In this document: piece by piece, positions 251 to 63,794 of the stretch | Layout of the letters: each line of letters begins with the position of its first letter | Numbering within the stretch: the stretch's first letter is position 1 | IMG/VR virus record: IMGVR_UViG_3300020471_000004 | Coordinates: 1 to 64,000 of that record | Length of the DNA stretch: 64,000 nt | Strand: one strand, 5' to 3' | Notes under the pieces: model-generated | Databases searched by the model: none | Seen by the model: the letters and a program-made list of their open reading frames with translations, nothing else | What the model was told of the DNA's origin: nothing | Position numbers and translations under genes: made by a program

Positions 251-659
251 GAATTACCGCTAAACAAGCTTTACCTAGTATAGGCAGGCTCGTAAAGCTA
301 ACTTCAATAGTGTTTTCATCTATCTGAGTAATTTCATCAGGCGATACTACTTTGCCTGTTTCATCGAAACACTGAAGGATAAATGTAGTACTATTCATGT
401 TATGCGCAATAGTCCAAGTGCTTGAAGCACTTTCTTGAACATGTACATAGCTGTCGGTATTACCGGTAACATCGTCCAGAACCACTGCTTGAAGGCTACC
501 GCCGACATTCATCAAGATTTCGCCTTCGCCTAGTGTTATACCTGTAAGCTGACGAGGACCTGAACCTTGCCTAACGATAACACTGTTAGCAGGAACATCA
601 CTAGGTAAATACGGACGAAGAGGAAGTTCCGTCTGAATAAAATCAGTAAACGCACTCAT
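243..659 (-). CDS. putative virion/tail-fibre-associated protein
   Basis: 138 aa, coupled to the upstream gene. C-terminal YVHVQESASSTWTIAHNMN resembles the Q..AS..W.I.HN motif of phage fibre-associated beta domains. Confidence 0.5.
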   Translation of the reverse strand: MSAFTDFIQTELPLRPYLPSDVPANSVIVRQGSGPRQLTGITLGEGEILMNVGGSLQAVVLDDVTGNTDSYVHVQESASSTWTIAHNMNSTTFILQCFDETGKVVSPDEITQIDENTIEVSFTSLPILGKACLAVIRE

Positions 660-2314
660 TATTCAGTCTCCTCAAATTCAAGAACCAGTGTGCCTGATGT
701 GTTAGAACCAGCAAAGGCACTATCAGAAATCCAAACATGAGTACCATTTGGATCTAAGTTGCCTTCAGAATCTACAATAGTAAATCCTTTCTGCACATCC
801 CGCTTATCTGGGTAATAGGTAAGAACGTCCGCGCCTTTGTACGAAACAATAACGTTTGACACATCGTATACGCTAGTACCGATAGCAACGAACTGTTCTA
901 GAGCAGGAACAGTAATATCACGCTTAACAATACCTGCAACCAGATACTGGTCACCGCTTGTGATAGTAGAGCCGTCTACGTCTGCCAAGTTAGTAATAAC
1001 CAAATCAGCAAAAGTATAGGTACCACGAGGAACAGAATCGTCTACAGTAAGAGTAGTTCGCCAAACTGTATCTGATATGCGATTCCAGTTACCGCTTAGT
1101 GTACCACCTGTTGCTGTCAAGCTTGTAGGGGCACCAAGAAGTTTCTGGTCAGCACGTACTTCTACGTTGTATACCTCACCTGCTGCACTTGAACGAAGGC
1201 TATCAGGATTACCAGGTATAACAATTTGCGCATCAGGTACATCGTCTGCAACGCTAACACGCCAGCGAGCTGTAGATACCGCACCGTTAGAAGAACGAGT
1301 AGCAGTAATCGTTACGTTGTTGGTATCAACTTGGTAACCGATAGTTTCATCTACGCGACTAACTGTTTTGGTAGCTGCATAGTTGTTAGGATCTGTAACA
1401 CCTAAACCAGCCGCAGCAGAGTAATCAACAACGTCAGCATTGGTAACAGTCATAGAGACATTAACGCTTTCGTTGTCTTTGATTGCTTGTTGACCTGCAG
1501 GGTAGCTATAACCAATTGCACCAAAAGTAGGCTTAACTTGCGATACGTCCATAGTATCTATAGATGTGAACGGGTCACCGTCTGTACCAAGTAAGTTAGT
1601 AGCAATTGCACGGATAGGTAAGTCACCAGTACGATTAGATACAACAAACGAGCCTGTGAACGCTTTGAAGCCTGCACCTGCGGAGTCATCAGCACCTAGT
1701 GTAAGCTGTTTTTGTTGACCGCTAACACCGTAGTCAAGAAGTCTGACTTCTTCGGCATCGTTGCCTACTACACCGCTTACGGTAACAGTATCGCCCTGTT
1801 TAACCTGTGTCTGTGAACCAGGGTAATCACCAAGCGAAAGTTGAGAAATCTCAGGGCCGCCTATCAAAACGTCAAGGCTAAACGAGTACTCGTAACCTGT
1901 AGAACTTACTACAAGAATAGTCTGTTCTGTGACTTCTGGGTCCAAAGTTAAATCAACGTAACCTGTGTAAAGACGCGGGTTAGCAGGGTCTGCGGTAATG
2001 TTTTCAATTTGAGCAGCAACACCGTTAGCGGTAACTTCAACACTTGAAGCGCCCATGTTAGGCTCTGCAAGAAATTGAACACGCACATTCTCGGTATTAG
2101 TAACTGCATGTGACAAGTAGAACTGAGAAGGGATAGTATTAGGCATGTATTCTTTAAGACCTACAATACCTTCTGATACAGGAACTAGATCGGTAACAAA
2201 TATACCACCAGCAGTTCTCAAGTCCACATATTGCTTAGGTACGGCATGCAATGCATCTACTGGATCACCAGATAGCAAAGCATGACCGACAACCTTGGGA
2301 GAGTGGAGTTTCAT
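659..2314 (-). CDS. putative tail fibre / Ig-like virion protein
   Basis: 551 aa, acidic and T/V/S/G-rich beta composition. N-terminal DPVDALHAVPKQYVD fibre-type motif. GAGG SD; preceded by the candidate late promoter. Confidence 0.55.
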   Translation of the reverse strand: MKLHSPKVVGHALLSGDPVDALHAVPKQYVDLRTAGGIFVTDLVPVSEGIVGLKEYMPNTIPSQFYLSHAVTNTENVRVQFLAEPNMGASSVEVTANGVAAQIENITADPANPRLYTGYVDLTLDPEVTEQTILVVSSTGYEYSFSLDVLIGGPEISQLSLGDYPGSQTQVKQGDTVTVSGVVGNDAEEVRLLDYGVSGQQKQLTLGADDSAGAGFKAFTGSFVVSNRTGDLPIRAIATNLLGTDGDPFTSIDTMDVSQVKPTFGAIGYSYPAGQQAIKDNESVNVSMTVTNADVVDYSAAAGLGVTDPNNYAATKTVSRVDETIGYQVDTNNVTITATRSSNGAVSTARWRVSVADDVPDAQIVIPGNPDSLRSSAAGEVYNVEVRADQKLLGAPTSLTATGGTLSGNWNRISDTVWRTTLTVDDSVPRGTYTFADLVITNLADVDGSTITSGDQYLVAGIVKRDITVPALEQFVAIGTSVYDVSNVIVSYKGADVLTYYPDKRDVQKGFTIVDSEGNLDPNGTHVWISDSAFAGSNTSGTLVLEFEETE

Positions 2315-20619: not shown

Positions 20620-22599
20620 TTAGAAGGATTTCATTGCTCTAGAAAGTTTTGATTGGAAGTCAGAAGTTGAAACCGCAGTTGATTGCGACTCCAAAGTTTT
20701 TTCTTTTGGTACAACACGAGGTTGTAAACGTTGCTCTACAGAACTAACAGATTCCTGTCCGTCTTTACGAGCAAAAGAACTAGCAGCAACCATTTCGGCA
20801 ACTTCGTTTTGGAAGTCAGCGGACTTGCTGATAAGTTCCATCGTCTGGTCAACCAACAGCTTGTTGAATGCACCTGCGTTAGCTTCAAACACGTTATCAA
20901 TAAGCTCACGAGCATTATCAATACCTGCAGCCTTCAAGGTACTGGCCAAGCTTGAAATGATTGGGTTAGACTTTCCACGGAACACACCGTTATTCAGTCC
21001 CATGATAGAAGTAGCAAGGGCAGCACCCAGGCGTTCCATCAGTTTAGCATCGCGGTCTTTCTGGGCTTGTTCGTAGCCTGCAATTTTTGCATCCGCTTGT
21101 GCAACGATTTCTTTAGAGATAACCGTTTGCATTGTTTGTTCGTCAAAAGCAATTGACTCGAAACCGAACTGTTTAAGACCTGACTCTACGCCATCGTTAG
21201 CGATTGCTTTTAAGCAAGCTTGGCGGTAAGTAGGTTGATTAAAGATGCCACGTAGATTACCTTCGACATTTGACTCTGATGCAACTGCAACAGGAGTAGC
21301 GCCATGGAAAGCAACCCAACGGTTTTCACCAGCAACAACAGATACATTAGCTAGGCTAACTTGGTCTGCTTGTAAACCGCCTTCGGTAGAAGATGCAACC
21401 GCAGTCATAACGTCAAGAGAAGCAGAAACAGATACAGAGTCAGATTCAAGCTCTTCATCGTCATCGTCATCTTCTTCATCTTCTTCGTCATCTAGACCAT
21501 CAACGTCTTCGTCTTCGTCAGAGTCATCTTCGTCAGAGTCATCTTCGTCTTCGTCAGAGTCATCTTCGTCTTCGTCTTCGTCTTCGTCTTCGTCTTCGTC
21601 AGAAGAAGAGATAACTTCGAAATCATCGTCCAGGTCATCGAACTCGTCATCGTCCAGGTCCGAATCAATGTCGTCAAGGTCGTCAAGGTCGTCATCGTCA
21701 TCTAGATCCATATCCATGTCGTCATCCAACATAATATCATCTAGGTCATCGTCTTCATCCATAAGAAGATCATCGTCCATGTCCATAGAGGCATGTTCAA
21801 GTTCATCTAAAACTTCTGGATCGACAACGGCGGTAGAACAGCTAGGGCACACTGTAATGTCTTCGCTAGAAGAAAGAACGTGCATACCGCATTCTTCTGA
21901 ATCAGCACAAACAAAGTAATGCGCATCAGTTCCGAAACGGTCAGCAGCATCTTGCACTGCACTAGAGTTAGACTCTAATTCCTGCGCTGCAACTTCTTCA
22001 CCGTAGAAAGGACTGTAGTGAACAGAACCGCTAGAGTTAGAAATAAAGCTAACTTGGTTTTCGGTGTCTTCGTAAGCAGAAACAGGAGAATCGCCTGCTA
22101 GAATAGCCAGGTAGTCTTCTTTGGCTTCTTCAAAAGAAGAGGCAACGACAACGATACCTTGCTCGCCTTCAAGCTCTTGAACAAGAGCGCTTTCAGACTC
22201 TAGCTCGTCTTCTAAATCGCGGTCGAAATCTACATCGGTACTGCACGAAGGACAGTTAGATACAGACTCGCAAGCATCTGCGATAATGTGCGTGTTACAT
22301 TCAGAACACATGGTGTAATGAACTGACACTTGGTCTTCTTGGTCGGCACTGCTGGTAACTTCGAGATCAGTATCTAAAACCTTCATTGAGTCTCTGTTAC
22401 CAGACAGAGGATTCAAAAAAGATTTATGCGCACCAGCAACAGTAGCGATAGCAAAAGAACCGTCGGCAGAAGAAAGAACTTCTAGGGACTCTTGTTTAGC
22501 AACCATTGCGTAGTTACGGATAGCTTGTTCTCGGGTACCTGCAGTAACAACAATACCGCCAAAGCTAGGCTGAGTCGGTGATTTTTGTTTTACTGTCAT
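20620..22599 (-). CDS. putative prohead scaffold/core protein
   Basis: 659 aa, very acidic with a D/E tract of about 110 aa, two repeated Cys-containing modules, many S-x-S sites; first gene of the head operon with GAGGAG SD. Confidence 0.65.
   Translation of the reverse strand: MTVKQKSPTQPSFGGIVVTAGTREQAIRNYAMVAKQESLEVLSSADGSFAIATVAGAHKSFLNPLSGNRDSMKVLDTDLEVTSSADQEDQVSVHYTMCSECNTHIIADACESVSNCPSCSTDVDFDRDLEDELESESALVQELEGEQGIVVVASSFEEAKEDYLAILAGDSPVSAYEDTENQVSFISNSSGSVHYSPFYGEEVAAQELESNSSAVQDAADRFGTDAHYFVCADSEECGMHVLSSSEDITVCPSCSTAVVDPEVLDELEHASMDMDDDLLMDEDDDLDDIMLDDDMDMDLDDDDDLDDLDDIDSDLDDDEFDDLDDDFEVISSSDEDEDEDEDEDEDDSDEDEDDSDEDDSDEDEDVDGLDDEEDEEDDDDDEELESDSVSVSASLDVMTAVASSTEGGLQADQVSLANVSVVAGENRWVAFHGATPVAVASESNVEGNLRGIFNQPTYRQACLKAIANDGVESGLKQFGFESIAFDEQTMQTVISKEIVAQADAKIAGYEQAQKDRDAKLMERLGAALATSIMGLNNGVFRGKSNPIISSLASTLKAAGIDNARELIDNVFEANAGAFNKLLVDQTMELISKSADFQNEVAEMVAASSFARKDGQESVSSVEQRLQPRVVPKEKTLESQSTAVSTSDFQSKLSRAMKSF
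21563..21600. repeat. (tcttcg)x6 in-frame microsatellite encoding (ED)n
   Basis: Read directly; part of the larger D/E low-complexity tract at about 21450-21790. Confidence 0.85.
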
Positions 22600-22675
22600 T
22601 CTGAATCTCCTCAGGAGGTACGTTTTAACGATACAAAGATACTATTTGCATAGAAAAACACTGTAGTTCTTTGCA

Positions 22676-22688
22676 TACTATAAAATTA
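22676..22688 (-). promoter_or_regulatory. candidate late promoter (TAATTTTATA)
   Basis: 13-nt tactataaaatta identical to 59020..59032; lies between a terminator and the head operon. Confidence 0.65.
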
Positions 22689-22805
22689 ATGAAAACAAGA
22701 AAAATCGTGTAGAAATAGCAAGATTTTTCAAAATATTTTTTATACGCAAAAATCAGCTATTTTTCGCTATTTTCAGCGAATCTTAGGTATGTGAAAAGGA
22801 GCCAT

Positions 22806-22834
22806 AAAAAAGCCCCGAATTAACGAGGCTTTTT
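22806..22834 (-). terminator. intrinsic terminator (possibly bidirectional)
   Basis: Minus strand aaaaa-gcctcg-ttaatt-cggggc-tttttt. Confidence 0.8.
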
Positions 22835-22907
22835 GTATTACTGGAAACTAACCGAAATACCTACCAATAAGCACAGCTTTCTGCATAGCAGTATTATTAC
22901 CTGCAGA

Positions 22908-30829: not shown

Positions 30830-30862
30830 GACCGACTTTTGTACCTTAATGTTAAAGATAGG

Positions 30863-46516: not shown

Positions 46517-47557
46517 TTATCGCGCCACTGTTACGCCTACACCTTCTACCTGAAAGTAAATACGCATCCCTTTGTTATCAGGGTGGTTAGCATTTAGCGC
46601 ACGGTACTTTCTAGGCTGGGCTTCACCGTATACGTCAACTTCATGTGTTGCATATTGCGAAGTAACGTCTGCCGAAGCAAAAGCAATAATATCAATCTCT
46701 TGTGAGTAGCTGTACCGTTGAGTATTTAAGCCACGCAGGAAGTTGATAATGTATTTACCGTTCTCGTATATACTTGTCTGTTGAACAGAGTTCATAATAC
46801 GCGTAGAGTCGGGAGTATCTGTAGATGCCGATACAGGGAAAGTAGGCGCGTTAACATCTTTTTCTCGCACAACAAACTTCTGGATACCTAAAGGCTCAGG
46901 AGAGTTCAGGTCACTGCCGCCTCCGCCATTTTGAGAGAAGATACAAAATAAAGGTTCTTTTAAAGTAGTGTCTAAAGCACCTGTACTGTCAACCATACGC
47001 GAAATAGCAAACCATGCAAACTTATCACCCTCACCATCAAAAGACTCTGCCCACATGCAGAAAGCAATGCCGTGGTCGGTTACTGTAAGGAAATAACTAA
47101 GAGGTACAGACTCTTCATCGTTACCTGAGAAACCCCAGTTTTCATAAGAGAAAAAGTGATTTCTGTTTCCGCCTGTTAGAACTTGGCTGTCTTTAAACAT
47201 AAAGCCTGACTTAGAGACATTTGTGTTGTCACCGCTAGTTCTTGAAGTAGCCACAGTAACTGAACCCGAGTTACCCAGAATTAACTGAGTAGGAGTAAAC
47301 GCATAAAAGTCTAAACTATCGTCATCGTCATCAGCCTCTATATAAAGTAACCAAGGCTGATTACCTTCACCGCACAAAGGGTCTACATCAACTGTAGGTT
47401 GAAGCAAAATATTCTTGTGAGTAGAGGCTAAAGTTAAATCTGAATTTTGTTGGTCTACTGACAAAACAGTAAAGCCGTTTGCAGTTAGGTTTATAGCTAA
47501 GTCTGCTGCAAGTGCCTCGACACTTATAAAGTTATTCTTTTCTATTGTAAAACCCAT
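46517..47557 (-). CDS. virion structural protein, paralogue 5 of 5
   Basis: Shared DHG..WAESFD, PLFC.F, FVVRE.DV.APT, TQRY, SADV.SQ, N.GMR motifs. Confidence 0.75.
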   Translation of the reverse strand: MGFTIEKNNFISVEALAADLAINLTANGFTVLSVDQQNSDLTLASTHKNILLQPTVDVDPLCGEGNQPWLLYIEADDDDDSLDFYAFTPTQLILGNSGSVTVATSRTSGDNTNVSKSGFMFKDSQVLTGGNRNHFFSYENWGFSGNDEESVPLSYFLTVTDHGIAFCMWAESFDGEGDKFAWFAISRMVDSTGALDTTLKEPLFCIFSQNGGGGSDLNSPEPLGIQKFVVREKDVNAPTFPVSASTDTPDSTRIMNSVQQTSIYENGKYIINFLRGLNTQRYSYSQEIDIIAFASADVTSQYATHEVDVYGEAQPRKYRALNANHPDNKGMRIYFQVEGVGVTVAR

Positions 47558-48753
47558 TAGATAATTCCTTCAGCTTCGGTGATCATAAGCATACGCATTC
47601 CTCTATTAAAAGAAGCGTTTGCGCCTAGACCGACATATTTTCGAGGAGTACTTTCGCCGTAGAAAGTAAGTTCAATTTCATTATTTTGAGATACTGCATC
47701 AGCACTAGTATATGCAATCATATCCAATTCATGAGGGTACCCATAACGCTGAGTACTTAGACCGTTAGGGAAGTGTATAATGAATTTTTCGTCTTCACCT
47801 ACAGCTACCTGTTCTTTGTTATTGATAATACGAGTAGAGTCCGCGGTATCAATAACAGCGCTACGTGGTAGAGTAGGCGCTGTTACATCGCTTTCGCGTA
47901 CTACCAAATACATGATCTGGTCATGCTCGTCCTTAGGATCTAGGTCTCCGTTACCTGCAAGAGAGAATACGCAAAATAGAGGACTAAGACCGTCAACTAT
48001 TACAGCACCTGTATCTTTATCTACCATACGCTGAACACAGAACCAAGCTTGGTCTTGTCCGTCGCTGTCATAAGCTTCTGCCCACATAGCAAAAGAAATA
48101 CCGTGGTCTGATAAGGTAATTCTATAGCTAAGAGGGTGTGCAGAGAAGTCGCCTACTTTGCCCCAGTTTGGCTGATTCTTCTGAGTGAAATCTTTTTCTT
48201 GGTTTTGTGCATCGTCATTGAAACAATAGAAGAAACCGTTAGTATAAGTCTTAGCAGTACCAGAACCGCCCTTAACGTCTATGTACTTACGAATCAAACT
48301 ATCGTAGCTTAAAAAGCCTGCACCTTTTTCAATTCTTTCGCGAGTACCGTTGCCTGACGAACTGTAAGGCATAAAGTCTTTAAAATATTTGTAAGCAATT
48401 CTCCAGGTACCATCTTGATTCTTTATAATTTGGGTAGGTGTACATACCCAAATACGTAACCAGTTTTGATGACCTTCATTGAATCGGTAAGACAGCTTAC
48501 CAGAACCATCGTCACCTTCAGTAGATTGTGCTGTAATAAACACAACCCAAGGTTGATCTTCATCACCTGCTAGCGGGTCTACAGATGTAGTTGCTTTTAA
48601 ACAAACAGCAGTCGTCTCTCCATCCGGTATAGAGTTACTTGCTGCCCCGTTGTGGTATATGGCTTCAAAACCATTAGCGACCATGTCTTTGCTAAGAGCA
48701 TTAAGAAGCTCTGTAGCTTTGGCAAAGCCTTCGCGTTTTGTAGTAAAACCCAT
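47557..48753 (-). CDS. virion structural protein, paralogue 4 of 5
   Basis: Same motifs; start MGFTTK at 48753 with GGAG SD. Confidence 0.75.
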   Translation of the reverse strand: MGFTTKREGFAKATELLNALSKDMVANGFEAIYHNGAASNSIPDGETTAVCLKATTSVDPLAGDEDQPWVVFITAQSTEGDDGSGKLSYRFNEGHQNWLRIWVCTPTQIIKNQDGTWRIAYKYFKDFMPYSSSGNGTRERIEKGAGFLSYDSLIRKYIDVKGGSGTAKTYTNGFFYCFNDDAQNQEKDFTQKNQPNWGKVGDFSAHPLSYRITLSDHGISFAMWAEAYDSDGQDQAWFCVQRMVDKDTGAVIVDGLSPLFCVFSLAGNGDLDPKDEHDQIMYLVVRESDVTAPTLPRSAVIDTADSTRIINNKEQVAVGEDEKFIIHFPNGLSTQRYGYPHELDMIAYTSADAVSQNNEIELTFYGESTPRKYVGLGANASFNRGMRMLMITEAEGII

Positions 48754-48773
48754 TGTTATCTCCAAAAATTAAA

Positions 48774-53084: not shown

Positions 53085-55577
53085 TTACGGGTTACCTGAC
53101 CCTTCGTTACTTGAACCATATGTGATAGCAAAGGTCTGTGTAGGACCATACGCAACGTCAGTACGGTAAATATAATATTCAGTGCCGCCAACTGTAACTT
53201 CTGCAGGAGATCCAAATGAACCATCTTGCCAAGTATGGCGACCCATGTCCCAACTACCTGCGGTATTATTAGCAGTATTAACAATGTACAAGTAGCCCCA
53301 TTCTTTCGGATACATAATAAAACCTTGTTCGGTATTATTATCATTCAGAGGTCCTACTGTAATTTCTTCACCGTTAGTTCCTTCTAGGCTACCTGTAAGT
53401 AAATCGTAGAACGCTGGGCTTGCGTAGTCTGCAATGTAGTCTTGAATAGGTGCAATACCCCATCTAGGTGATACATCGCTATCTGCAACATTGAGCGTAA
53501 GGTTACCTGTAACAGTGGTTCCGTTCTCAACATAAGTACCACGTACTGTAACAACTTTATTGCCTGTAACGTTACCGAGCAATACATCATTAGAGTTAGA
53601 ACCTGCGAACGTGCTGCCGTATGCATTGTTAACAAATGACGGAGTAAGGTCAGGACTTGCTTTAACGTCTGCGGTACTACCATCATTATAAGTAACAGTG
53701 TAGGCAATAATTGCAGTCTCACCTTCAGTGTAGTCGTTGTCAGGGCTTGTGGTTAATGCAAGCGATACAGGAACTAGTGCAGCCGCGATAATATCAACGT
53801 TTTTAGTCGCACTCATTTCAACACCGTTAATGGTATGAGTAGCACTGATAGTAACCTGTTGATCGTTTTCAATATCACCTGCTGTTAGTCTACCGCTACC
53901 ATTTATAGAACCGTAGGTGTCACCTGCGGTTAGTGACCAATCAGCATCTGCTGTGTAGGTCTGAGTAGTAGAATTATCAAACGTTACACGTAAGCTATAA
54001 TTGCTGCTGGTTTGCTCGTTGACAGAGTTAGCACCGATAATAGTTGCAGACACAGGAACAGGCGGATTATTAGTAAGAGTAACATCTAGTGTACCTGTAA
54101 TAGTCTTGCCGTATTCGGTAAACTCTGCTTGTAGCCTAACAGTACGGTCTTGATTGATTGAGTTAGCAGTAAGCTCGTAGCCATTAAGAGTACTATAAGC
54201 GTTAGACAGTTGCGTAAAGGTATCTGGGGTAAACGGATGTTCTTCACTGCCGTCATCGCGCACAAGCCTTACAGTATACGTAGCGCTTTCACCTTCTGCG
54301 ACTGACGTTGGTCCAACTATTTCAAGAGACTGAATAAGAGGATCTGTATCTACTACTGTAACGGTTTTGGTTGCTGAAACCTCAGTACCATCGTAAGTAT
54401 AGGTAGCAGAAATAACAACAGGCTTATCGCCGCCGTTAACCTCTTTGGCACTTAGCAATGCTGCACCGGTGATAGTTGCGTGAGCAGTAGAATCTAGGCT
54501 AATCGCGTCTGCTACAACATCTTGAGTAGAGTTATCACTAAAGGTAGCTCTAATGATATACTGAGAGTCAGTGTTTTCATCTACCAAGTTGTCACCGACT
54601 ATTTCAAGTCTAGTTATCTCCAGACCTGCCTGGATTTCAATACTGTGGTTATCTGTTGCAGTAACACCATCTTCGGTATAGCTTGCATTAAGAACAACCT
54701 GAGTATTAGAAGTAACGTTGTTGGTAACAAAGTTGCCTGCAGTATTGATACTTGAAACAGTATTGTTAGAAGTGGTAAATGTATTAGGTGTAACAATACT
54801 TGTTCTGCCGTCTGCGTAGAAAGCAGTAACGGTCATTTGTACAGATGATTGTTCAGGTATAGACGTAGGTCCGTTGATCTGAATAGCAATAAGAGAAGTA
54901 TCTACTTCCACCAAATCGTCCTGTGTAGGGAAACGCCAAATAGCAATCCATTCATTAGAATTGTCTTCGCTTTGTCCTATAAGAAACAGCATCATTCCTT
55001 GTTGAGGAGGCGCACTATTAGAAACCAATGCGTATTCATTGGCATTAATTTTTATTTTGGTACGCGGCTTATCTGGGTGCGTATGGAATACAGGATAACG
55101 TGGATTAGAGTTTCTAGGGTCTTCAATAGAAACAACACGTGCCTCAGGTTCAGGACCACTAAGCAATCCGAGTCCGTGTTCAGATACAGTGGCAGGTCCA
55201 GTAGGTTCTGAGTTAGTAGATATACCATAAAGTCTAGGGTCTTCAACAACTGGAGTATAATACTGCGCTTCTACCCATAAGTCTGCGTAAGCGGTCAACT
55301 CTTCCCAAGAATTATCATAAAAGCCGCTGTCGCTGTGGCTAATACGTTTTAAAACTTTCTTGTAAGCAGGATGATCACTATCAGCAGGGATCCAAAGAAC
55401 GTTATAAGGCAACTGACTAAAAGTAGGCTCTAGATAAGATACTACAACAATAAATGTTTTGTTAGGGTTGCTTCGTTCAGGTTGTACCGTAAACTGGATA
55501 GGATTTGTAGGCTCAATGTTACGATACCCTGCAAGTGCAAGGTAATTTTCAATAAAGTCTATTAACTGTTGGTCCAT
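53085..55577 (-). CDS. tail fibre-like protein with tandem Ig-like repeats
   Basis: About five repeats of I.G...V.E...Y.V...(Y/F).DG....A.YT..G; N-terminus paralogous to 55924 and 56661. Confidence 0.7.
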   Translation of the reverse strand: MDQQLIDFIENYLALAGYRNIEPTNPIQFTVQPERSNPNKTFIVVVSYLEPTFSQLPYNVLWIPADSDHPAYKKVLKRISHSDSGFYDNSWEELTAYADLWVEAQYYTPVVEDPRLYGISTNSEPTGPATVSEHGLGLLSGPEPEARVVSIEDPRNSNPRYPVFHTHPDKPRTKIKINANEYALVSNSAPPQQGMMLFLIGQSEDNSNEWIAIWRFPTQDDLVEVDTSLIAIQINGPTSIPEQSSVQMTVTAFYADGRTSIVTPNTFTTSNNTVSSINTAGNFVTNNVTSNTQVVLNASYTEDGVTATDNHSIEIQAGLEITRLEIVGDNLVDENTDSQYIIRATFSDNSTQDVVADAISLDSTAHATITGAALLSAKEVNGGDKPVVISATYTYDGTEVSATKTVTVVDTDPLIQSLEIVGPTSVAEGESATYTVRLVRDDGSEEHPFTPDTFTQLSNAYSTLNGYELTANSINQDRTVRLQAEFTEYGKTITGTLDVTLTNNPPVPVSATIIGANSVNEQTSSNYSLRVTFDNSTTQTYTADADWSLTAGDTYGSINGSGRLTAGDIENDQQVTISATHTINGVEMSATKNVDIIAAALVPVSLALTTSPDNDYTEGETAIIAYTVTYNDGSTADVKASPDLTPSFVNNAYGSTFAGSNSNDVLLGNVTGNKVVTVRGTYVENGTTVTGNLTLNVADSDVSPRWGIAPIQDYIADYASPAFYDLLTGSLEGTNGEEITVGPLNDNNTEQGFIMYPKEWGYLYIVNTANNTAGSWDMGRHTWQDGSFGSPAEVTVGGTEYYIYRTDVAYGPTQTFAITYGSSNEGSGNP

Positions 55578-55915
55578 TATTCTTCCCCTACTTGAAAAGA
55601 TTGGACAACGTCTGCGGTAACCACATCGTCTGTAAATATACAGCGTAGCTCTACAAGTCCGGGAGTGTCAAAAACTACATCAAAGTATTCAGATGCAGTA
55701 TGCGAAGGCAAAGTCGGCAAAGGATAGTTCTTGATAGGCCCTGGTTCAAGAGTTGCATTAGCAGTAACTACCATCACCTCTTTAGGTACAAACCAGCCTG
55801 CAAAGACTATCTCGTTGTTATTATTTTCTGCCCAAATCGGCATAAGAATTCGTTTTCGGGTATTCAGAGGAATAATATCCTCATGAGGTACACCGTATCG
55901 TGTAACTGTAGACAT
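55577..55915 (-). CDS. hypothetical protein in the fibre cluster
   Basis: 112 aa, coupled. Confidence 0.6.
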   Translation of the reverse strand: MSTVTRYGVPHEDIIPLNTRKRILMPIWAENNNNEIVFAGWFVPKEVMVVTANATLEPGPIKNYPLPTLPSHTASEYFDVVFDTPGLVELRCIFTDDVVTADVVQSFQVGEE

Positions 55916-55923
55916 ATTAGCTC

Positions 55924-56649
55924 CTATACCAAAACAATATCAGCAGAGACCAAAGTCAGGCTGTTCATTGCATCTTGGTGAAGTCCGTTATCTCGGTCAG
56001 GTTCAGTAACAGAAGGATAAACGTGATTAGAAGTCAAGTCTCCCCAACTGGCATCCCCTAGGTGGTCAGTGAGCAAGGTATTACCTTCATCAGAAGTACC
56101 GTACTCGATAACTACTGCTCTACCTGTAGTCGCTAAACGTGTAGCAGGAACTTCATCATGCATTTCATCATGCGGAAGAGGATCACGCGCATCTGATAAA
56201 GTAGGGTCACCTTCACCGATAGCTACAGGGTCACCTGGATTTGTAGGAGTAACAGTAAGCGTAACCATACCGAGTGCGTCCGTAGAAGAATCAGGAGTGC
56301 TAGGAAGAATATCGTCACCAGAATCCCAAAATTGGTCTTCCCAAAGGTCAACGTACTGAGTAATTTCAACCCACGTATGTACAGTATTGCCACTTTGAGG
56401 AGTAGCTTTTGACTCTCTTCGGTATACTGTCAGGTAATCTGACTTAGACGAATCAAATTGGACCCAAAGAACGTTAAGAGGTAACGTTAAATCGTGCGGC
56501 TCTGTTTTTGCAGCAACTACAGTAGTGGTTTTAGCAATAACAGGATTTGTTCGGCGTACAATAACAGGTTGAGTGTGGCTCTCAATATCTGCGTAATCTC
56601 TAATATCGTGAACAAAGTCACGAAGTTTTTGTGCTTGCTCAGTAGCCAT
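55924..56649 (-). CDS. putative fibre/attachment protein (paralogue)
   Basis: EP..L.LPLNVLW, Y..V.RR.SK, D..LSDAR.P..H motifs. Confidence 0.65.
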   Translation of the reverse strand: MATEQAQKLRDFVHDIRDYADIESHTQPVIVRRTNPVIAKTTTVVAAKTEPHDLTLPLNVLWVQFDSSKSDYLTVYRRESKATPQSGNTVHTWVEITQYVDLWEDQFWDSGDDILPSTPDSSTDALGMVTLTVTPTNPGDPVAIGEGDPTLSDARDPLPHDEMHDEVPATRLATTGRAVVIEYGTSDEGNTLLTDHLGDASWGDLTSNHVYPSVTEPDRDNGLHQDAMNSLTLVSADIVLV

Positions 56650-56660
56650 AGGATGCTCCT

Positions 56661-57305
56661 TTATGCAATATCATCTGGTGTAATTTTACGCCATTCAAGG
56701 TCACCTGAAGGAGTAAACATCAAAGCAGCGCTAACCTGTGCAATACTATTTAGAATATTACCGTGACCTGCCGAGTGTGCTAACATAGTAGCAGGTTTCT
56801 CTACGTGCGTGTGTGACTTAGGTACTCGGTTATCGCTCATTCGGGGGTCATCAGACACAATGAACACAGGCTGGTTAGGGTCTGTAGGGTCAACACTGAT
56901 TCGTGCTTTACCTGGGCCTTCTACACTAGCGTAAGGTACTGGTGTAACACCTACCAGTGCCAGATCAGAAGGGTCATAAGTTTGGTCTTCAAGAATATCC
57001 TCATAGAAGTAAAGAACTTCCCAATCTTGAGTAATACCTTCCGAACCGAAAGAACCTGGTGATTTAGATACTCGACGTAATGCTTGTTTGTACAAAGGGC
57101 TATCTGCTCGATAACATATCCATACAACGTTTAAAGGGAGAACCATATTAATAGGTTCTCCCTGGCTGCAAACAATCGCAATAGTACGATTGGTGTGTAC
57201 GTCAGTATGCCTCATAACTATCGGTGTATCTTCGGAAACGTTTTTAACATCTGATAGTTTTTCAAGAGTGTTAATTAGTTTCTCTAGTTTTGATTCCATA
57301 CCCAT
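56661..57305 (-). CDS. putative fibre/attachment protein (paralogue)
   Basis: EP..MVLPLNVVW, YK.ALRRVSK, DPRMSDNR.P..H.H motifs. Confidence 0.65.
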   Translation of the reverse strand: MGMESKLEKLINTLEKLSDVKNVSEDTPIVMRHTDVHTNRTIAIVCSQGEPINMVLPLNVVWICYRADSPLYKQALRRVSKSPGSFGSEGITQDWEVLYFYEDILEDQTYDPSDLALVGVTPVPYASVEGPGKARISVDPTDPNQPVFIVSDDPRMSDNRVPKSHTHVEKPATMLAHSAGHGNILNSIAQVSAALMFTPSGDLEWRKITPDDIA

Positions 57306-57316
57306 AATATTTTACC

Positions 57317-58963
57317 TTACGCGTCTGTGGCTGTAGAGCCAGTAGGGTTTACATTAAAGACAACGTGAATACGCTTGGCTGCAATAACAGGATCCATATA
57401 CATGTCCAGAATCACATCACCGTTAGCAATAGTGTCGTTGGTGTTGTTACGCGAATCACAGATATTTGTAAACTCGTAAACACCTTGACCTCTACGGATA
57501 GGCTCTAGAGTGCTATCAGCAATAGCTTTCATTCTGTCACGCAATAACTGGTCATTCGGACGGAATACTCCAATCTTACTACTGCGTACCATTGTTTTAA
57601 GTACGTGCTTGACTAGTCTAACAACGTTAACGTATTGGAAAGACGTAGCCTGTGTTTGAGTAGTAGACTGACCCCAGATAACGTTACCTTGACCTCGAGG
57701 CATTTTGCGAATCGGATTGATTTGCGCCTGGTCTAGTGCGTTACGTGCGCCTTGGTCATAGTGGACTCGCATACCTAAAACACTTAAAGAGCCTAGTTCG
57801 ATACCTGCAGGAGCAAACCATAAAGCACGGTCATTATCTGCTTTTGCAAATGCGGCAGCTACGTAACCTGAAGGCGGCACATAGATTTCTAAGTCATTAG
57901 CAGAGTCATATACCAACACATCACTTGAATAGATAGCACACGCATGGCTAGACATATTAAGGATGTTTTTCTTGTAGTTGATTGCATCGGCAACTTCTTG
58001 CATGTCGCTAGGCATATCAAGAATTGCTATACAGTCATTACGGGCTAGCGCAATTTCGTTCATTGCATGTTGCACAGTATGGTGAGTGTAACCACCGTTA
58101 ACCATAATATCAATATCGATTTCTTCCGGGTCGCTGTAATTTTCTTGCCACGCTTCAATGATTTGGTCATTGGTAACAGGTAGTCCGTCAGTACCTCCAT
58201 CGAGCTGTACACTAGCGGTATTGACAATATCAAACTCAGGACAAAGAGTATTGTTTCGACAACGAACGAGATTAGATTTCTTGTTGATTACTTCTTCAAT
58301 ATGCAACTGGTTACCAGCTTCATCTGATTCGTAATGGCGAGTAACAAGGAAACTTTCATCAGGCGCAACGTTACCTGTAGGTTTAGTACGGTAAACATCG
58401 ACATAGAAGTATAAGGGGTTATGACCGTTACCGCGTAAAGCAACACCGATAGGGTTAGATGGGCGTACAACGATAGTAATACCGTTGTTCCATTGACCGG
58501 GGTCTATTGCGCAGAAGTAGCAAGGTAAGCTCGTAACACCAGGCGTAGTAGGAGTAAATCCGTAAGTATTAAGCGGATCATCTTTACCTTGAGCATTGCC
58601 TGTGGCAGAGTCTTTGAATACAGTAAGGGCAAGTTGAGGATTTTGTGCGTTAACGTCATCCACACTTAACATTGCGCCTGCTGTGAGAGCGCCGTTAACT
58701 ACGCGAGTAACGTAACACATGCTTGATTGGTTTAAGAAAGGTTCAACAGAGTATGCCATGTAACCGTAGCTAGGGTCACCAAAGCCGAATTTAGCTTTGT
58801 ATTTTGCAAAATCTGTTACCAGGGTACGTTGACCAACAGGGCCACTAGGAGCAGCACCTACAAATGCAGCAATAGAGCTTGGCGCATTATCAGGTCTTTC
58901 GCTGAGGTCTTTGATATAACTGTAGACCCCGTAAGCTGGATTTGATGGGTTTATTGTAGACAT
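57317..58963 (-). CDS. tail sheath protein 2
   Basis: GVY, GPVG, YVTRV, DCIAILDMPSD, VPPSG, WFAPAG, IWG, NNTNDTIANGD motifs shared with sheath 1. Confidence 0.92.
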   Translation of the reverse strand: MSTINPSNPAYGVYSYIKDLSERPDNAPSSIAAFVGAAPSGPVGQRTLVTDFAKYKAKFGFGDPSYGYMAYSVEPFLNQSSMCYVTRVVNGALTAGAMLSVDDVNAQNPQLALTVFKDSATGNAQGKDDPLNTYGFTPTTPGVTSLPCYFCAIDPGQWNNGITIVVRPSNPIGVALRGNGHNPLYFYVDVYRTKPTGNVAPDESFLVTRHYESDEAGNQLHIEEVINKKSNLVRCRNNTLCPEFDIVNTASVQLDGGTDGLPVTNDQIIEAWQENYSDPEEIDIDIMVNGGYTHHTVQHAMNEIALARNDCIAILDMPSDMQEVADAINYKKNILNMSSHACAIYSSDVLVYDSANDLEIYVPPSGYVAAAFAKADNDRALWFAPAGIELGSLSVLGMRVHYDQGARNALDQAQINPIRKMPRGQGNVIWGQSTTQTQATSFQYVNVVRLVKHVLKTMVRSSKIGVFRPNDQLLRDRMKAIADSTLEPIRRGQGVYEFTNICDSRNNTNDTIANGDVILDMYMDPVIAAKRIHVVFNVNPTGSTATDA

Positions 58964-58967
58964 TAAG

Positions 58968-59049
58968 TAACTCCCTAAAGGAATAAGGCTTTTTATATAA
59001 AAGACCGTGTAAACAGCTTTACTATAAAATTATTAAACTTAGGGAGTTA
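58968..59049 (-). promoter_or_regulatory. candidate late promoter (59020..59032) nested inside an 11-bp anti-SD/SD inverted repeat
   Basis: taactccctaa (58968..58978) and ttagggagtta (59039..59049) are perfect complements; the first is the sheath-2 SD. Confidence 0.7.
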
Positions 59050-59067
59050 TTAAAGAGCGGAATATAA

Positions 59068-60165
59068 CTATCGAGCGCCAACAGCTCTACGAGCCATCAA
59101 CATCATTGTGCTGAATCGGTGGTGCAGTAAAGTTTTTACAGTAAGATTAGACTCCATCAAATGTTTCAACTTTTCTAAGTCAGTAACAGAGCCGTCCATT
59201 AAGAAAATGTCGTGTCCCATTACTAACTCAGGATGGCTGCAACGGTTTGCTAGTAAAGGTAAACAATCGTAATACATAGACTCTGCAATACAGTATCCGA
59301 AGTTTTCTTCTATTGAATGAGAAATCATTACCTTAGATTCAGCAAGAACTTTGTAGTACTCTTTCTTAGAAAGTCCTGCCTTTATTGTTACTAAACCTTT
59401 GGCGGCTAAAGCTTCTGCTTGACTTATCAAAGAGGGGTTGTTGCCTCTAAACGAAGACCTGCTGGTACAGATTACAATTTCACAACTGGGGTCTATATTG
59501 TTTTTGTAGTCTAGTGCTAGGTAAACACTTTGCATTGGACGTTTTTCAGTATCAAATCGATTAGGTAAAACAATTTGATTCTTTTTGGCTTTAACTTCTA
59601 CGCCCACATCAAACTGATCTTTAAACAGCGGGTTACCTGACACATAGATAATCTCAGAGATTGTTTGTTCAAGTGCCTGATCACCTATTGGTTTTACCCG
59701 TCTCTCAATAAAGGCGTTTTTATGGTACATACTACCAACAAATACCTGGTCACAAGCAAGAACCCAGCCTAGCTCAGTATAACGCTGATAAGACTCTGCG
59801 ATACTAAACGCATCTTCTACGGTGTAAGATGCTGCGTGAAGAAAGCCTGTGATTCTAACATTAATGCCGTTCATCTGGGACATTAATCGTACAGACTCTA
59901 GACCCCAGAACTCTATATCCCCGAAGAAAAAAGAATCTCCTTCGCTTACTTGACCTGAATTAAATAAAGCGCTTATCTTTTGCAACTGCACCATCTTATA
60001 GTGAATGGTACTGTTAATATCAAGGAAAGTACCTACAACAACTTCATCTTGCAAGGGAGTGCCGTCAATAATAACACAGTCATCAAAATACCCAGGTATT
60101 AAGTCATACCATTGTTGGGTGTACCGCTCTTCGAGAGGCTCTATAGGCACATAAAATACTGTCAT
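59068..60165 (-). CDS. GT-B (GT4-like) glycosyltransferase
   Basis: NRFDTEK and EENFGYCIAE (E-x7-E) motifs. Confidence 0.82.
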   Translation of the reverse strand: MTVFYVPIEPLEERYTQQWYDLIPGYFDDCVIIDGTPLQDEVVVGTFLDINSTIHYKMVQLQKISALFNSGQVSEGDSFFFGDIEFWGLESVRLMSQMNGINVRITGFLHAASYTVEDAFSIAESYQRYTELGWVLACDQVFVGSMYHKNAFIERRVKPIGDQALEQTISEIIYVSGNPLFKDQFDVGVEVKAKKNQIVLPNRFDTEKRPMQSVYLALDYKNNIDPSCEIVICTSRSSFRGNNPSLISQAEALAAKGLVTIKAGLSKKEYYKVLAESKVMISHSIEENFGYCIAESMYYDCLPLLANRCSHPELVMGHDIFLMDGSVTDLEKLKHLMESNLTVKTLLHHRFSTMMLMARRAVGAR

Positions 60166-62940: not shown

Positions 62941-63747
62941 CTATTCCTCGAATGTGAATTCATCACTGTCTGTAGGCGAAACAAAAACACCAGAACGGTG
63001 CATTTCTATTTTGCGTTTATATATTGCTATCTTTTCTTTACAGAATTCGATAGTGGCGTTGAGCATGTTAAGATAAAACACGCTAGCTACTCTAGACCCA
63101 TGCAAAGTATACATGGTCATAACAGGATAGAATTCATCCTTCTTTATGTCTTCTATCTGATATTCAATTTCTGAGATTTTTATTTCTAGTTGTTCTTTCT
63201 CTACTGCTCTTTGCTCAAAGTCAGGACGGTTCTTTAAGTCTTTAAGGTAATCGGCTCGTGCTTTCTTATCAAAGACCAGTTTATAGATAGCTTTTAATTC
63301 ATCTAGGTCAAGCAGTTCGTATGCTTCAACAGCACGATGGTAAAAGTCTACCTTGCCTGAATCCCCTACTTTATCTGGATGTGTTTCGTTAACTATCTTT
63401 CGGTAGATCTCTCTGCAAATAGACTGGTGTGCTTTTGATATATCCCTTTCGTCTGCTTTGAAATCGTTTCCTTCCTCGTTAAGGTAATCGTCTTCATCTT
63501 GGTCTAGATCAGAACGCATCTGGGCACTGGTAAGTCTATCGAACTCTTCGGATATATCACTAAGCTCTGCCATCAAGCGCTCTTTTTCGGCAGCTTCCTC
63601 AATATTAGCACTGTCTACAATATCTAAAACTTCTTCATGGAGAACATTTAAAGCTTTAAGCTCTTTTTGTGAAGAAGCCAATAACTTTTTAAGTTTCGAA
63701 ATTTCTGAAACACTGACTTTGTAGGGATCGTACAGTACAGGTAACAT
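62941..63747 (-). CDS. J-domain (DnaJ-like) protein with flanking coiled coils
   Basis: YRKIVNETHPDKVG..F..A.EAYELL. Confidence 0.78.
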   Translation of the reverse strand: MLPVLYDPYKVSVSEISKLKKLLASSQKELKALNVLHEEVLDIVDSANIEEAAEKERLMAELSDISEEFDRLTSAQMRSDLDQDEDDYLNEEGNDFKADERDISKAHQSICREIYRKIVNETHPDKVGDSGKVDFYHRAVEAYELLDLDELKAIYKLVFDKKARADYLKDLKNRPDFEQRAVEKEQLEIKISEIEYQIEDIKKDEFYPVMTMYTLHGSRVASVFYLNMLNATIEFCKEKIAIYKRKIEMHRSGVFVSPTDSDEFTFEE

Positions 63748-63766
63748 GTTTAACGCCTTTTAGTAG

Positions 63767-63788
63767 AATAGGGGCATTTGCCCCTATT
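63767..63788. terminator. intergenic hairpin, possible terminator
   Basis: aataggggc-attt-gcccctatt; U-tract weak on the minus strand. Confidence 0.45.
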
Positions 63789-63794
63789 TATTAT

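What the first reader, a model, noticed from the sequence alone, without database searches (positions are those of the whole stretch)
58968..59049. Anti-Shine-Dalgarno switch straddling the late promoter of sheath 2
Seen: a perfect 11-bp inverted repeat. On the mRNA the upstream arm UAACUCCCUAA lies 5' of the TAATTTTATA motif and the downstream arm UUAGGGAGUUA is the ribosome-binding site. I see no terminator between the modification operon and the sheath. Established: T4 e, soc and I-TevI are silenced on early read-through RNA by RBS-sequestering hairpins absent from late transcripts. Inference: the same logic here with a 60-nt span, which also supports the promoter call.
Basis: partly seen in the sequence, partly recalled or inferred. 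Interest (0 to 1): 0.65.

Follow-up and report, generated by a model that had tools for sequence, protein, structure and literature searches.

The report
Anti-ribosome-site hairpin bracketing a phage promoter
In this marine jumbo phage, the ribosome-binding site of a tail-sheath gene can pair with a matching sequence placed just upstream of the gene's own promoter, so RNA read through from the upstream genes is probably untranslatable while RNA started at that promoter is translatable; phage T4 uses the same trick, and here it is conserved in relatives.

Summary
A perfect 11-bp inverted repeat (mRNA sense TAACTCCCTAA 59049..59039 and TTAGGGAGTTA 58978..58968, 60 nt apart) places the sheath gene's Shine-Dalgarno GGGAG in a long-range helix. 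The helix extends to about 16 bp and reaches the AUG.

It is more than chance:
- Only 2 of 271 genes in the 232.7-kb phage genome have 11 bp of perfect upstream complementarity to their ribosome site.
- Both upstream arms lie 4-6 nt before the same motif, TAATTTTATAGTA.
- TAATTTA is the most enriched 7-mer in sense-oriented upstream intergenic DNA of four related genomes, including cultured phage PaBG. It precedes sheath-like genes in the three marine genomes examined. That makes it a credible phage-specific promoter.
- Two marine relatives keep the helix through one compensatory change and one G.U pair. The PaBG clade and contig L032 have different arms matched to their own ribosome sites, in the same position relative to the motif.
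- No terminator-like hairpin separates the upstream glycosyltransferase operon from the sheath gene.

I conclude it is a T4-style translational insulator for read-through RNA, a new member of a known kind. No transcription start or RNA data exist, so "late" timing and differential translation remain inferred. The design is absent or not significant in several relatives.

The parts
59039..59049 (-). Upstream (anti-Shine-Dalgarno) arm, mRNA sense UAACUCCCUAA. The extended arm is 59037..59054 (UUUAAUAACUCCCUAAGU).
   Evidence: RNAduplex -17.3 kcal/mol. It lies 6 nt 5' of the promoter-like motif. Relatives keep it with one compensatory change and one G.U pair.
59020..59032 (-). Promoter-like motif TAATTTTATAGTA. 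It belongs to the class TAATTTWA(Y)NNTAG, probably read by a phage-encoded sigma factor.
   Evidence: Three copies in the genome, all upstream of genes. TAATTTA is the most enriched 7-mer in sense upstream intergenic DNA of G000, G001, NCTB and PaBG (12 of 14 copies). It is conserved upstream of orthologous genes in three genomes. A homologue of PaBG sigma gp118 is at G000:116714-117721.
59000..59020 (-). Leader hairpin AAAGCUGU-UUAC-ACGGUCUUU, starting right after the motif. It is either a 5' stem-loop of the promoter-initiated RNA or an inner helix that shortens the loop of the long-range helix.
   Evidence: Fold. A hairpin of different sequence sits at the same place in G001 and NCTB and after most other copies of the motif.
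58968..58978 (-). Downstream arm UUAGGGAGUUA, the ribosome-binding site (SD GGGAG at 58975..58971). The extended pairing 58962..58980 reaches the A and U of the AUG.
   Evidence: The unpaired probability of -16..+3 is 0.22 in read-through RNA and 0.56 in RNA started after the motif.
57317..58963 (-). Regulated gene: a 548-aa tail sheath protein, the orthologue of PaBG gp213. It is the first gene of a run of tail genes.
   Evidence: phrog_23, E 3.5e-81. 43% identity to PaBG tail sheath gp213 and 73% to the NCTB protein. PaBG gp213 is a virion protein (PMC7412058).
59068..60165 (-). Upstream gene whose transcript would read into the sheath gene: a 365-aa GT1-type glycosyltransferase, the last gene of a non-structural cluster.
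   Evidence: Pfam Glycos_transf_1, E 5.7e-8. No terminator-like hairpin with a U-run lies between it and the sheath gene.

Best explanation
The spacer is a transcript-dependent translational switch of the T4 e/soc/I-TevI type.

How it would work:
- RNA started upstream, in the glycosyltransferase cluster, runs unterminated into the sheath gene and carries both arms.
- The upstream arm UAACUCCCUAA pairs with the ribosome site UUAGGGAGUUA. The helix extends to about 16 bp, reaches the AUG and is helped by an inner hairpin. Ribosomes then cannot start on the sheath gene.
- RNA started at the phage-specific promoter TAATTTTATAGTA, which lies between the arms, lacks the upstream arm. It begins with a small 5' hairpin and has a freer ribosome site.

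The sheath protein would therefore be made only when that promoter fires. Since the motif precedes structural genes, that is most likely late, under the phage's own sigma factor.

Shown: the helix, its rarity, its association with the motif, the motif's enrichment, and conservation with compensatory changes.
Inferred: the transcription start, read-through, the timing, the effect on translation, and a possible follow-on Rho-dependent termination in the untranslated sheath gene.
For: 1. The helix is real and stable.

2. Genome-wide, the only two genes with 11-bp perfect complementarity to their ribosome site are this one and the 227-aa gene at 88848..89531 (TTTCTCCAACA/TGTTGGAGAAA). Both arms lie 4-6 nt upstream of TAATTTTATAGTA, which has only three copies in the genome. 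The second example also folds that way, z = -3.6. The third copy follows a strong terminator and has no long-range arm.

3. The arm sequences differ between the two genes and match each gene's own ribosome site. A permutation of arms against ribosome sites over 54 motif sites gives p = 0.009, with these genes as the outliers.

4. TAATTTA is the most enriched intergenic 7-mer in four genomes. It precedes three of the window's four sheath-like genes in all three marine genomes. In G000 it also precedes the fourth sheath-like gene, an 805-aa protein with a weak virion-structural hit, and a RuvC-like resolvase. A sigma-factor homologue is present. No sigma-70-type site is called in the spacer.

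5. Relatives:
- G001: UUACUCUCUUAAAG/CUUUUAGGGAGUAA, with A-U changed to U-A and one U.G pair that can form only in the sense RNA.
- NCTB: AACUCCCU.AAAG/CUUU.AGGGAGUU. RNAalifold recovers the helix.
- Orthologues of the 227-aa gene show U:A to A:U and A:U to G:C double changes.
- PaBG clade: GUUUCCGUCAAC/GUUGACGGAGAC, 14-15 nt upstream of GCTAATTTAC. It is the strongest of 14 PaBG motif sites, z = -5.7.
- L032: UCCUAUUCGC/GUGAAUAGGA, abutting the motif. Shuffle p <= 0.013 in six lineages.

6. The spacer carries no differences where the flanking coding DNA differs: 0 of 88 nt against 53 of 1200 in L028 vs L029, and 0 of 104 against 12 of 597 in the window vs the X10 contig.

7. The predicted ribosome-site accessibility falls 2-3 fold in the long RNA in all three marine lineages.

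8. The T4 precedent is documented.
Against: - There are no RNA data. No RNA run holds the locus and no transcriptome of any relative was found. The start site, read-through and timing are therefore unverified.
- The design is not universal. Shuffle tests are not significant for L113, L030, L033, L035, L125, Lu11, HRDY3 and Y3, and are borderline for JA13.
- PaBG-clade phages have a strong terminator directly upstream as well, so the arm is not simply a substitute for one.
- Part of the PaBG arm (TTTCGTTTCCG) also follows another PaBG terminator.
- For the 227-aa gene, the predicted accessibility difference holds in G000 but not in G001 or NCTB.
- Even the short RNA has only moderate predicted accessibility (0.39-0.56).
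- By duplex energy rather than perfect length, the two genes rank only 8th-9th of 271.
- Downstream tail genes would still be translatable from read-through RNA unless polarity intervenes.
Confidence: 0.7

Rival explanations
1. The long-range helix is an RNA processing site, for RNase III or a similar enzyme. It would cut the polycistronic RNA between the glycosyltransferase and sheath genes, as in T7 intergenic sites, rather than act mainly as a translational block.
For: A conserved intergenic helix of about 16 bp closes a structured loop. The spacer is strongly conserved. This reading can coexist with SD sequestration, since a cut within the SD helix would also inactivate the read-through RNA.
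Against: - The helix is short for RNase III, at 11 perfect and about 16 imperfect bp.
- The downstream arm is always the ribosome site itself, in every lineage and in a second gene. A mere processing site would not need that.
- The promoter motif lies between the arms.
Confidence: 0.1
2. The motif is not a promoter, or the start lies upstream of the arm. The helix would then be present in all sheath mRNAs and act as a constitutive damper, or as the target of a trans-acting activator or helicase that sets the sheath protein level.
For: No start site has been mapped. The ribosome site of the short RNA is only moderately open in silico. In the PaBG clade a terminator sits just upstream, so read-through RNA should be scarce there, yet the arm is kept.
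Against: - TAATTTA is the top intergenic k-mer in four genomes: 12 of 14 PaBG copies are upstream of genes in the sense direction.
- It is conserved at orthologous positions.
- Hairpins begin right after it.
- A major virion protein is unlikely to carry a permanently sequestered ribosome site.
Confidence: 0.12
3. The inverted repeat acts in DNA, as two half-sites for a dimeric regulator flanking the promoter (looping or repression), and its overlap with the ribosome site is incidental.
For: The arms flank a promoter-like motif symmetrically.
Against: - The arm sequences differ between genes and lineages and always track the gene's own ribosome site.
- G001 keeps pairing through U.G pairs that exist only in the sense-strand RNA.
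- The arm spacing varies from 60 to more than 110 nt.
Confidence: 0.03
4. It is chance complementarity in AT-rich, low-complexity spacer DNA next to a purine-rich SD.
For: 8-9 bp matches are common. U-rich or C-rich terminator tails pair with any SD, which is why several relatives fail the shuffle test.
Against: - 0.8% of shuffles reach 11 bp.
- This gene and one other are the top 2 of 271, and both sit at the same rare motif.
- There are compensatory changes.
- The spacer is conserved.
Confidence: 0.05

Closest known systems
Phage T4 genes e (lysozyme), soc, 49 and I-TevI: ribosome-site-sequestering hairpins on early/middle read-through RNA, with a late promoter inside or next to the 5' arm (PMC3014915; McPheeters/Gold and Gott/Shub work cited there)
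   Same: The SD and AUG pair with an upstream segment. A promoter lies between the 5' arm and the ribosome site, so its transcripts lack the arm. The upstream genes run in the same direction without an effective stop. The regulated product is a late function.
   Different: - The promoter motif is TAATTTWA..TAG, not TATAAATA.
- The likely sigma is a sigma-70-like protein homologous to PaBG gp118, not gp55/gp33.
- The loop is long (60-112 nt) with an inner hairpin, not a compact stem-loop.
- The target is a tail sheath gene at an operon boundary.
- The phage group is unrelated to T4 (PaBG/Lu11/NCTB 'Lupandier' jumbo phages).
- There is no experimental support here.
Aeromonas phage Aeh1 mobE and other homing-endonuclease genes with ribosome-site hairpins (Gibb and Edgell, cited in PMC3014915)
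   Same: An RNA hairpin sequesters the ribosome site of a gene embedded in a differently timed transcription unit.
   Different: Those are mobile-element genes in T4-like phages. This is a core structural gene, and the feature is conserved at orthologous positions over a phage group.
Long-range 5' UTR anti-SD pairing in bacterial mRNAs and riboswitch expression platforms
   Same: A CUCC-containing segment masks GGAG.
   Different: No ligand- or temperature-sensing element is evident and there is no Rfam match. The switch is set by which promoter made the RNA.

Membership tests
T4-type promoter-dependent ribosome-site sequestration (e, soc, 49, I-TevI) | SD and/or AUG held in a helix with an upstream segment of the same RNA | tested here: met
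   11/11 perfect, about 16 bp extended, -17.3 kcal/mol. The MFE contains the helix, z = -3.94. 77% of ribosome-site positions pair to the upstream arm in the ensemble.
T4-type promoter-dependent ribosome-site sequestration (e, soc, 49, I-TevI) | A promoter between the 5' arm and the ribosome site, so that its transcripts lack the 5' arm | tested here: inconclusive
   A strongly enriched, conserved promoter-like motif lies there, and hairpins start just after it. No transcription start has been mapped.
T4-type promoter-dependent ribosome-site sequestration (e, soc, 49, I-TevI) | Upstream transcription reads into the gene (no effective terminator) | tested here: met
   No terminator-like hairpin with a U-run in the spacer or back to about 75.4 kb on the - strand, apart from weak intragenic matches. 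Actual read-through RNA was not observed. PaBG-clade relatives do have a terminator.
T4-type promoter-dependent ribosome-site sequestration (e, soc, 49, I-TevI) | The long RNA is poorly translated and the short RNA is well translated | not testable with these tools
   Only thermodynamic predictions are available: unpaired probability 0.22 vs 0.56.
T4-type promoter-dependent ribosome-site sequestration (e, soc, 49, I-TevI) | T4 late promoter TATAAATA read by gp55/gp33 (homology to the T4 system) | tested here: not met
   The motif is TAATTTTATAGTA. The only sigma candidate found is a homologue of the PaBG sigma-70-like gp118. This is therefore an analogue, not a homologue, of the T4 elements.
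Intrinsic (Rho-independent) terminator | A compact G+C-rich hairpin followed by a U-run | tested here: not met
   The loop is 60 nt, no U-run follows the 3' arm, and the scan calls no site in the spacer.
Curated cis-regulatory RNA families (Rfam 15) | A match to a covariance model | tested here: not met
   No match at E <= 1 in 58700-59300 on either strand.
RNase III processing site (T7-type) | About two turns of mostly continuous duplex between cistrons, and cleavage | tested here: inconclusive
   The helix is 11 bp perfect and about 16 bp with one mismatch. Cleavage cannot be tested here.

The most novel reading that the evidence does not exclude
The arm-promoter-hairpin-ribosome-site cassette may be an ancient modular insulator of the PaBG/Lu11/NCTB jumbo-phage group. 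It would mark boundaries where non-structural operons run into structural genes. It would work together with a group-specific sigma factor that reads a -35-less TAATTTA promoter, and with Rho-dependent polarity in the untranslated sheath gene. Premature sheath protein, which could polymerise without a baseplate, would then never be made. The same analysis would give the first promoter map for this phage group: TAATTTA, ACTGTAAA and early sigma-70-like classes.
Probability: 0.3. Interest if true: 0.6.

Novelty: new member of a known kind. Interest (0 to 1): 0.5.

Why it matters
- It extends a classic T4 regulatory trick to an unrelated, little-studied group of jumbo phages, and to a core structural gene rather than a lysis or homing-endonuclease gene.
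- The comparative evidence for it is unusually clean for a purely computational call.
- As a by-product it defines the likely promoter of the group (TAATTTA core, enriched 8-12 fold in four genomes) and a second motif class. No transcription data exist for these phages, so this helps annotate them.
- PaBG carries the same arrangement upstream of gp213 and grows on Pseudomonas aeruginosa PAO1, so the model can be tested directly at the bench.

Tried and rejected
- **RNA evidence.** No public RNA run holds the locus. The metatranscriptomes from the same samples hold next to none of its words. Laying DNA contigs gave only strain variation.
- **Rfam.** No match.
- **Megablast against phage records.** No match.
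- **The 227-aa protein of the second example.** No PHROG or Pfam family and no relatives by the word-based or tblastn searches. Its orthologues were found only through the motif search.
- **An IMG/VR pattern search for the conserved leader.** It gave only the known relative plus two chance hits inside unrelated coding DNA.
- **My first reading of PaBG.** I took CTCCGT just after its motif as the arm. That was wrong: it is not conserved in the PaBG clade and lies downstream of the motif. The conserved arm is GTTTCCGTCAAC, upstream of the motif.
- **'A lineage has either a terminator or an anti-SD arm.'** Rejected, because the PaBG clade has both.
- **A sigma-70 promoter reading of the spacer.** Rejected: there is no -35 element in the window's version and no site is called.
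- **Pfam sigma-70 domains.** They do not detect the phage sigma. It was found only with the PaBG gp118 protein.
- **Caveat on gene calls.** Those used for the statistics come from my own simple ORF/SD caller, so start sites are partly chosen by SD presence.

Full report
**Context.**
- The window is the first 64 kb of a 232,692-bp viral record (G000, 40.6% G+C, CheckV about 93% complete). It occurs in marine metagenomes.
- In this part of the genome all genes lie on the - strand.
- The gene at 57317..58963 encodes a 548-aa tail sheath protein (phrog_23, E 3.5e-81). It is 73% identical to that of phage NCTB, 77% to several IMG/VR and metagenome contigs (G001 type), and 43% to PaBG gp213.
- These phages form the PaBG/Lu11/NCTB 'Lupandier' group. 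The group is known for having two virion sheath proteins and a divergent sigma-70-like factor, gp118 (PMC7412058).
- The upstream gene (59068..60165) is a GT1-type glycosyltransferase in a cluster with a PAPS-reductase-like protein.

**The observation.**
- Read in mRNA sense, the 104-nt spacer runs: stop TAG (59070..59068), 18 nt, UAACUCCCUAA (59049..59039), GUUUAA, TAATTTTATAGTA (59032..59020), a small hairpin AAAGCUGU/ACGGUCUUU (59020..59000), an A/U-rich stretch, UUAGGGAGUUA (58978..58968), CUUA, AUG (58963).
- The repeat finder reports the pair with 60 nt between the arms.
- RNAfold puts the helix in the MFE structure (-27.9 kcal/mol, z = -3.94).
- RNAduplex extends it to about 16 bp, up to the AUG (-17.3 kcal/mol).
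- A perfect repeat of 11 bp or more arises in 0.8% of dinucleotide shuffles of the spacer.

**Is it more than chance, and is the motif a promoter?**
- I called 271-272 genes with a simple ORF caller and asked, for each, for the longest perfect complement of its ribosome site (-22..+3) in the 140 nt further upstream. The typical value is 5-6 bp.
- Only two genes reach 11 bp: this sheath gene and a 227-aa lysine-rich protein gene at 88848..89531 (UUUCUCCAACA/UGUUGGAGAAA, 112 nt apart).
- Both upstream arms end 4-6 nt before the same 13-mer, TAATTTTATAGTA. That 13-mer has only three copies in the genome, all upstream of genes.
- The second locus folds the same way (z = -3.6) and also has a hairpin starting right after the motif.
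- The third copy (22688, before gene 20620..22599) follows a strong intrinsic terminator and has no long-range arm.
- The two arms differ in sequence and each matches its own gene's ribosome site. The pairing is therefore gene-specific, not a shared promoter element.
- Over 54 motif sites in three genomes, own arm/ribosome-site energies beat permuted pairs (p = 0.009). The outliers are the sheath gene and the 227-aa gene.
- An unbiased k-mer count shows TAATTTA as the most enriched 7-mer in sense-oriented upstream intergenic DNA of G000, G001 and NCTB (8-10 fold).
- The same holds in PaBG despite its 56% G+C: 12 of its 14 copies are in sense-oriented upstream intergenic DNA.
- The motif (TAATTTWA, often ..TAG a few nt later) precedes three of the window's four sheath-like genes in all three marine genomes. 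In G000 it also precedes the fourth sheath-like gene, an 805-aa protein with a weak virion-structural hit, and a RuvC-like resolvase.
- No conserved -35-like element precedes it, and the sigma-70 scan calls nothing in the spacer.
- G000 encodes a homologue of PaBG sigma gp118 (E 3.7e-67).
- Taken together, this is a credible phage-specific promoter, probably for late genes. No start site has been mapped for any member of the group.

**Comparative evidence.**
- In G001-type contigs the arms are UUACUCUCUUAAAG and CUUUUAGGGAGUAA. In NCTB they are AACUCCCUuAAAG and CUUUuAGGGAGUU. In both, ATAATTTTAT lies between the arms, followed by an inner hairpin of different sequence.
- RNAalifold recovers the anti-SD helix. 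All nine core pairs are kept except the terminal pair in NCTB (U-U). There is one A-U to U-A double change and one C-G to U-G change. The latter can pair only in the sense RNA, which argues against a DNA-level role.
- Orthologues of the 227-aa gene, found through the motif, show UAUCUCU/GGAGAUA in G001 and UUUCUCCGA/UCGGAGAAA in NCTB. These are two further double changes relative to G000.
- The spacer is also more constrained than its flanks. L028 vs L029 differ at 53 of 1200 flanking coding positions and at 0 of 88 spacer positions. A metagenome contig differs from the window at 12 of 597 coding positions and at 0 of 104 spacer positions.
- Further out, every sheath orthologue examined has a TAATTT motif 33-102 nt before its start.
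- In the PaBG clade a different arm, GUUUCCGUCAAC, lies 14-15 nt upstream of GCTAATTTAC. It is complementary to GUUGACGGAGAC at the ribosome site (-20 to -24 kcal/mol). Among 14 PaBG motif sites this is the strongest own pair, z = -5.7.
- Contig L032 has UCCUAUUCGC abutting the motif, paired with GUGAAUAGGA.
- Shuffle tests give p <= 0.013 in six lineages and about 0.03-0.06 in three more. They are not significant in L113, L030, L033, L035, L125, Lu11, HRDY3 and Y3. In those, C/U-rich terminator tails make the null high, or no arm exists.
- The design is therefore recurrent at this gene but not universal.

**Mechanism.**
Read-through RNA from the non-structural cluster carries both arms and masks the ribosome site. 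RNA from the internal promoter lacks the 5' arm.
- Partition-function estimates agree. The mean unpaired probability of -16..+3 falls from 0.56 to 0.22 (window), 0.39 to 0.12 (G001) and 0.43 to 0.20 (NCTB). In the long RNA, 66-80% of those positions pair to the upstream arm.
- Both genes that carry the device in G000 follow non-structural genes transcribed in the same direction without a good terminator. These are the glycosyltransferase here and an SbcD-like nuclease at 89.7 kb. That fits an insulator at an operon boundary.
- An untranslated 1.6-kb sheath reading frame would also invite Rho-dependent termination. That would extend the insulation to the downstream tail genes, but this step is inference only.

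**Caveats.**
- There are no RNA data of any kind.
- PaBG-clade phages combine the arm with a strong terminator, so the arm would there be a fail-safe for leaky termination.
- Part of the PaBG arm also follows another PaBG terminator.
- For the 227-aa gene the predicted accessibility gain holds only in G000.
- By duplex energy rather than perfect length, the two loci rank 8th-9th of 271.
- My gene calls use SD presence to choose starts.

**Rivals.**
- An RNase III-type processing site is possible and not exclusive. It does not explain why the 3' arm is always the ribosome site.
- A constitutive damper (no internal start) conflicts with the promoter evidence and with the needs of a major virion protein.
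- A DNA operator pair conflicts with the gene-specific arms, the U.G pairs and the variable spacing.
- Chance is disfavoured by every test above.

**Comparison and novelty.**
- Functionally this is the arrangement described for T4 e, soc, 49 and I-TevI, where late promoters just upstream of the ribosome site give transcripts that lack the 5' strand of the inhibitory helix (PMC3014915).
- It is not homologous to those elements. The promoter motif, the sigma factor, the phage lineage, the long structured loop and the target gene all differ.
- I found no description of promoters or of this structure for the PaBG/NCTB group in the held literature, and there is no Rfam family.
- I rate it a new member of a known kind. 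It is of moderate interest, raised somewhat by the group-wide promoter motif it exposes and by being testable in PaBG on PAO1.

Noticed in passing
G000:88848-89740 (outside the window; locus L012:2849-3740): A second copy of the same device. The arm UUUCUCCAACA lies 4 nt upstream of TAATTTTATAGTA. A conserved leader hairpin GCAAGAAU..UUCUUGGC follows. The ribosome site UGUUGGAGAAA belongs to a 227-aa lysine-rich protein with no family match. The gene follows an SbcD-like nuclease gene and is followed by a terminator.
   Followed up: yes
window 659-2314, 15511-17130, 47557-48765, 57317-58963 (all - strand): There are four sheath-like genes in one window (phrog_15433, phrog_23, phrog_12249, phrog_23). 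The literature on the group speaks of two sheath proteins. Each is preceded by a TAATTTWA motif.
   Followed up: partly
window 5568, 39946, 59142 (- strand) and many sites elsewhere in G000, G001, NCTB and PaBG: A second enriched intergenic motif, (A)ACTGTAAA (5-8 fold across the four genomes), is probably another phage promoter class. One copy lies inside the glycosyltransferase gene, 93 nt upstream of the anti-SD arm. RNA started there would carry both arms.
   Followed up: partly
G000:128553-160983 (+ strand, outside the window); one copy in the window at 30845 (-): There are early-type promoters with a conserved upstream block ..TTAAGTCGGTACAAAACAG.. and a TATAAT -10 element, clustered in the small-gene region.
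   Followed up: no
window 22600-22840 (- strand): The third TAATTTTATAGTA copy follows a strong terminator (AAAAAGCCTCGTTAATTCGGGGCTTTTTT). The ribosome site of gene 20620..22599 sits in a local palindrome CCTCCTGAGGAG, kept as CTCCTAGGAG in G001. Its purpose is unknown.
   Followed up: partly
window 53085-57305 (- strand): These are three tandem paralogues sharing a phrog_13325/phrog_14098 domain: 56661..57305, 55924..56649 and the N-terminus of the 830-aa protein at 53085..55577. They lie directly downstream of the sheath gene.
   Followed up: no
window 63766-63789: A perfect 10-bp G+C-rich hairpin (AATAGGGGCAAATGCCCCTATT) lies upstream of gene 62941..63747. It has no U-run on the - strand, and the scan calls a terminator-like site only on the + strand.
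   Followed up: no
G001:94765-94880 (relative; seen): In G001 the 551-aa sheath-like gene has a 9-bp arm UCAAUAUAC, 8 nt upstream of TAATTTAATGTTAG, pairing with GUAUAUUGA at its start codon. The window's orthologue (659..2314) has a terminator upstream instead and no arm.
   Followed up: partly
PaBG KF147891.1 about 165100 and 61870: The string TTTTCGTTTCCG follows two different intrinsic terminators in PaBG. Part of the PaBG anti-SD arm may therefore be a generic post-terminator element.
   Followed up: partly
G000:116714-117721 (outside the window): This is a homologue (36% identity, E 3.7e-67) of the PaBG sigma-70-like factor gp118. Pfam Sigma70_r2 and Sigma70_r4 models do not detect it.
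   Followed up: partly
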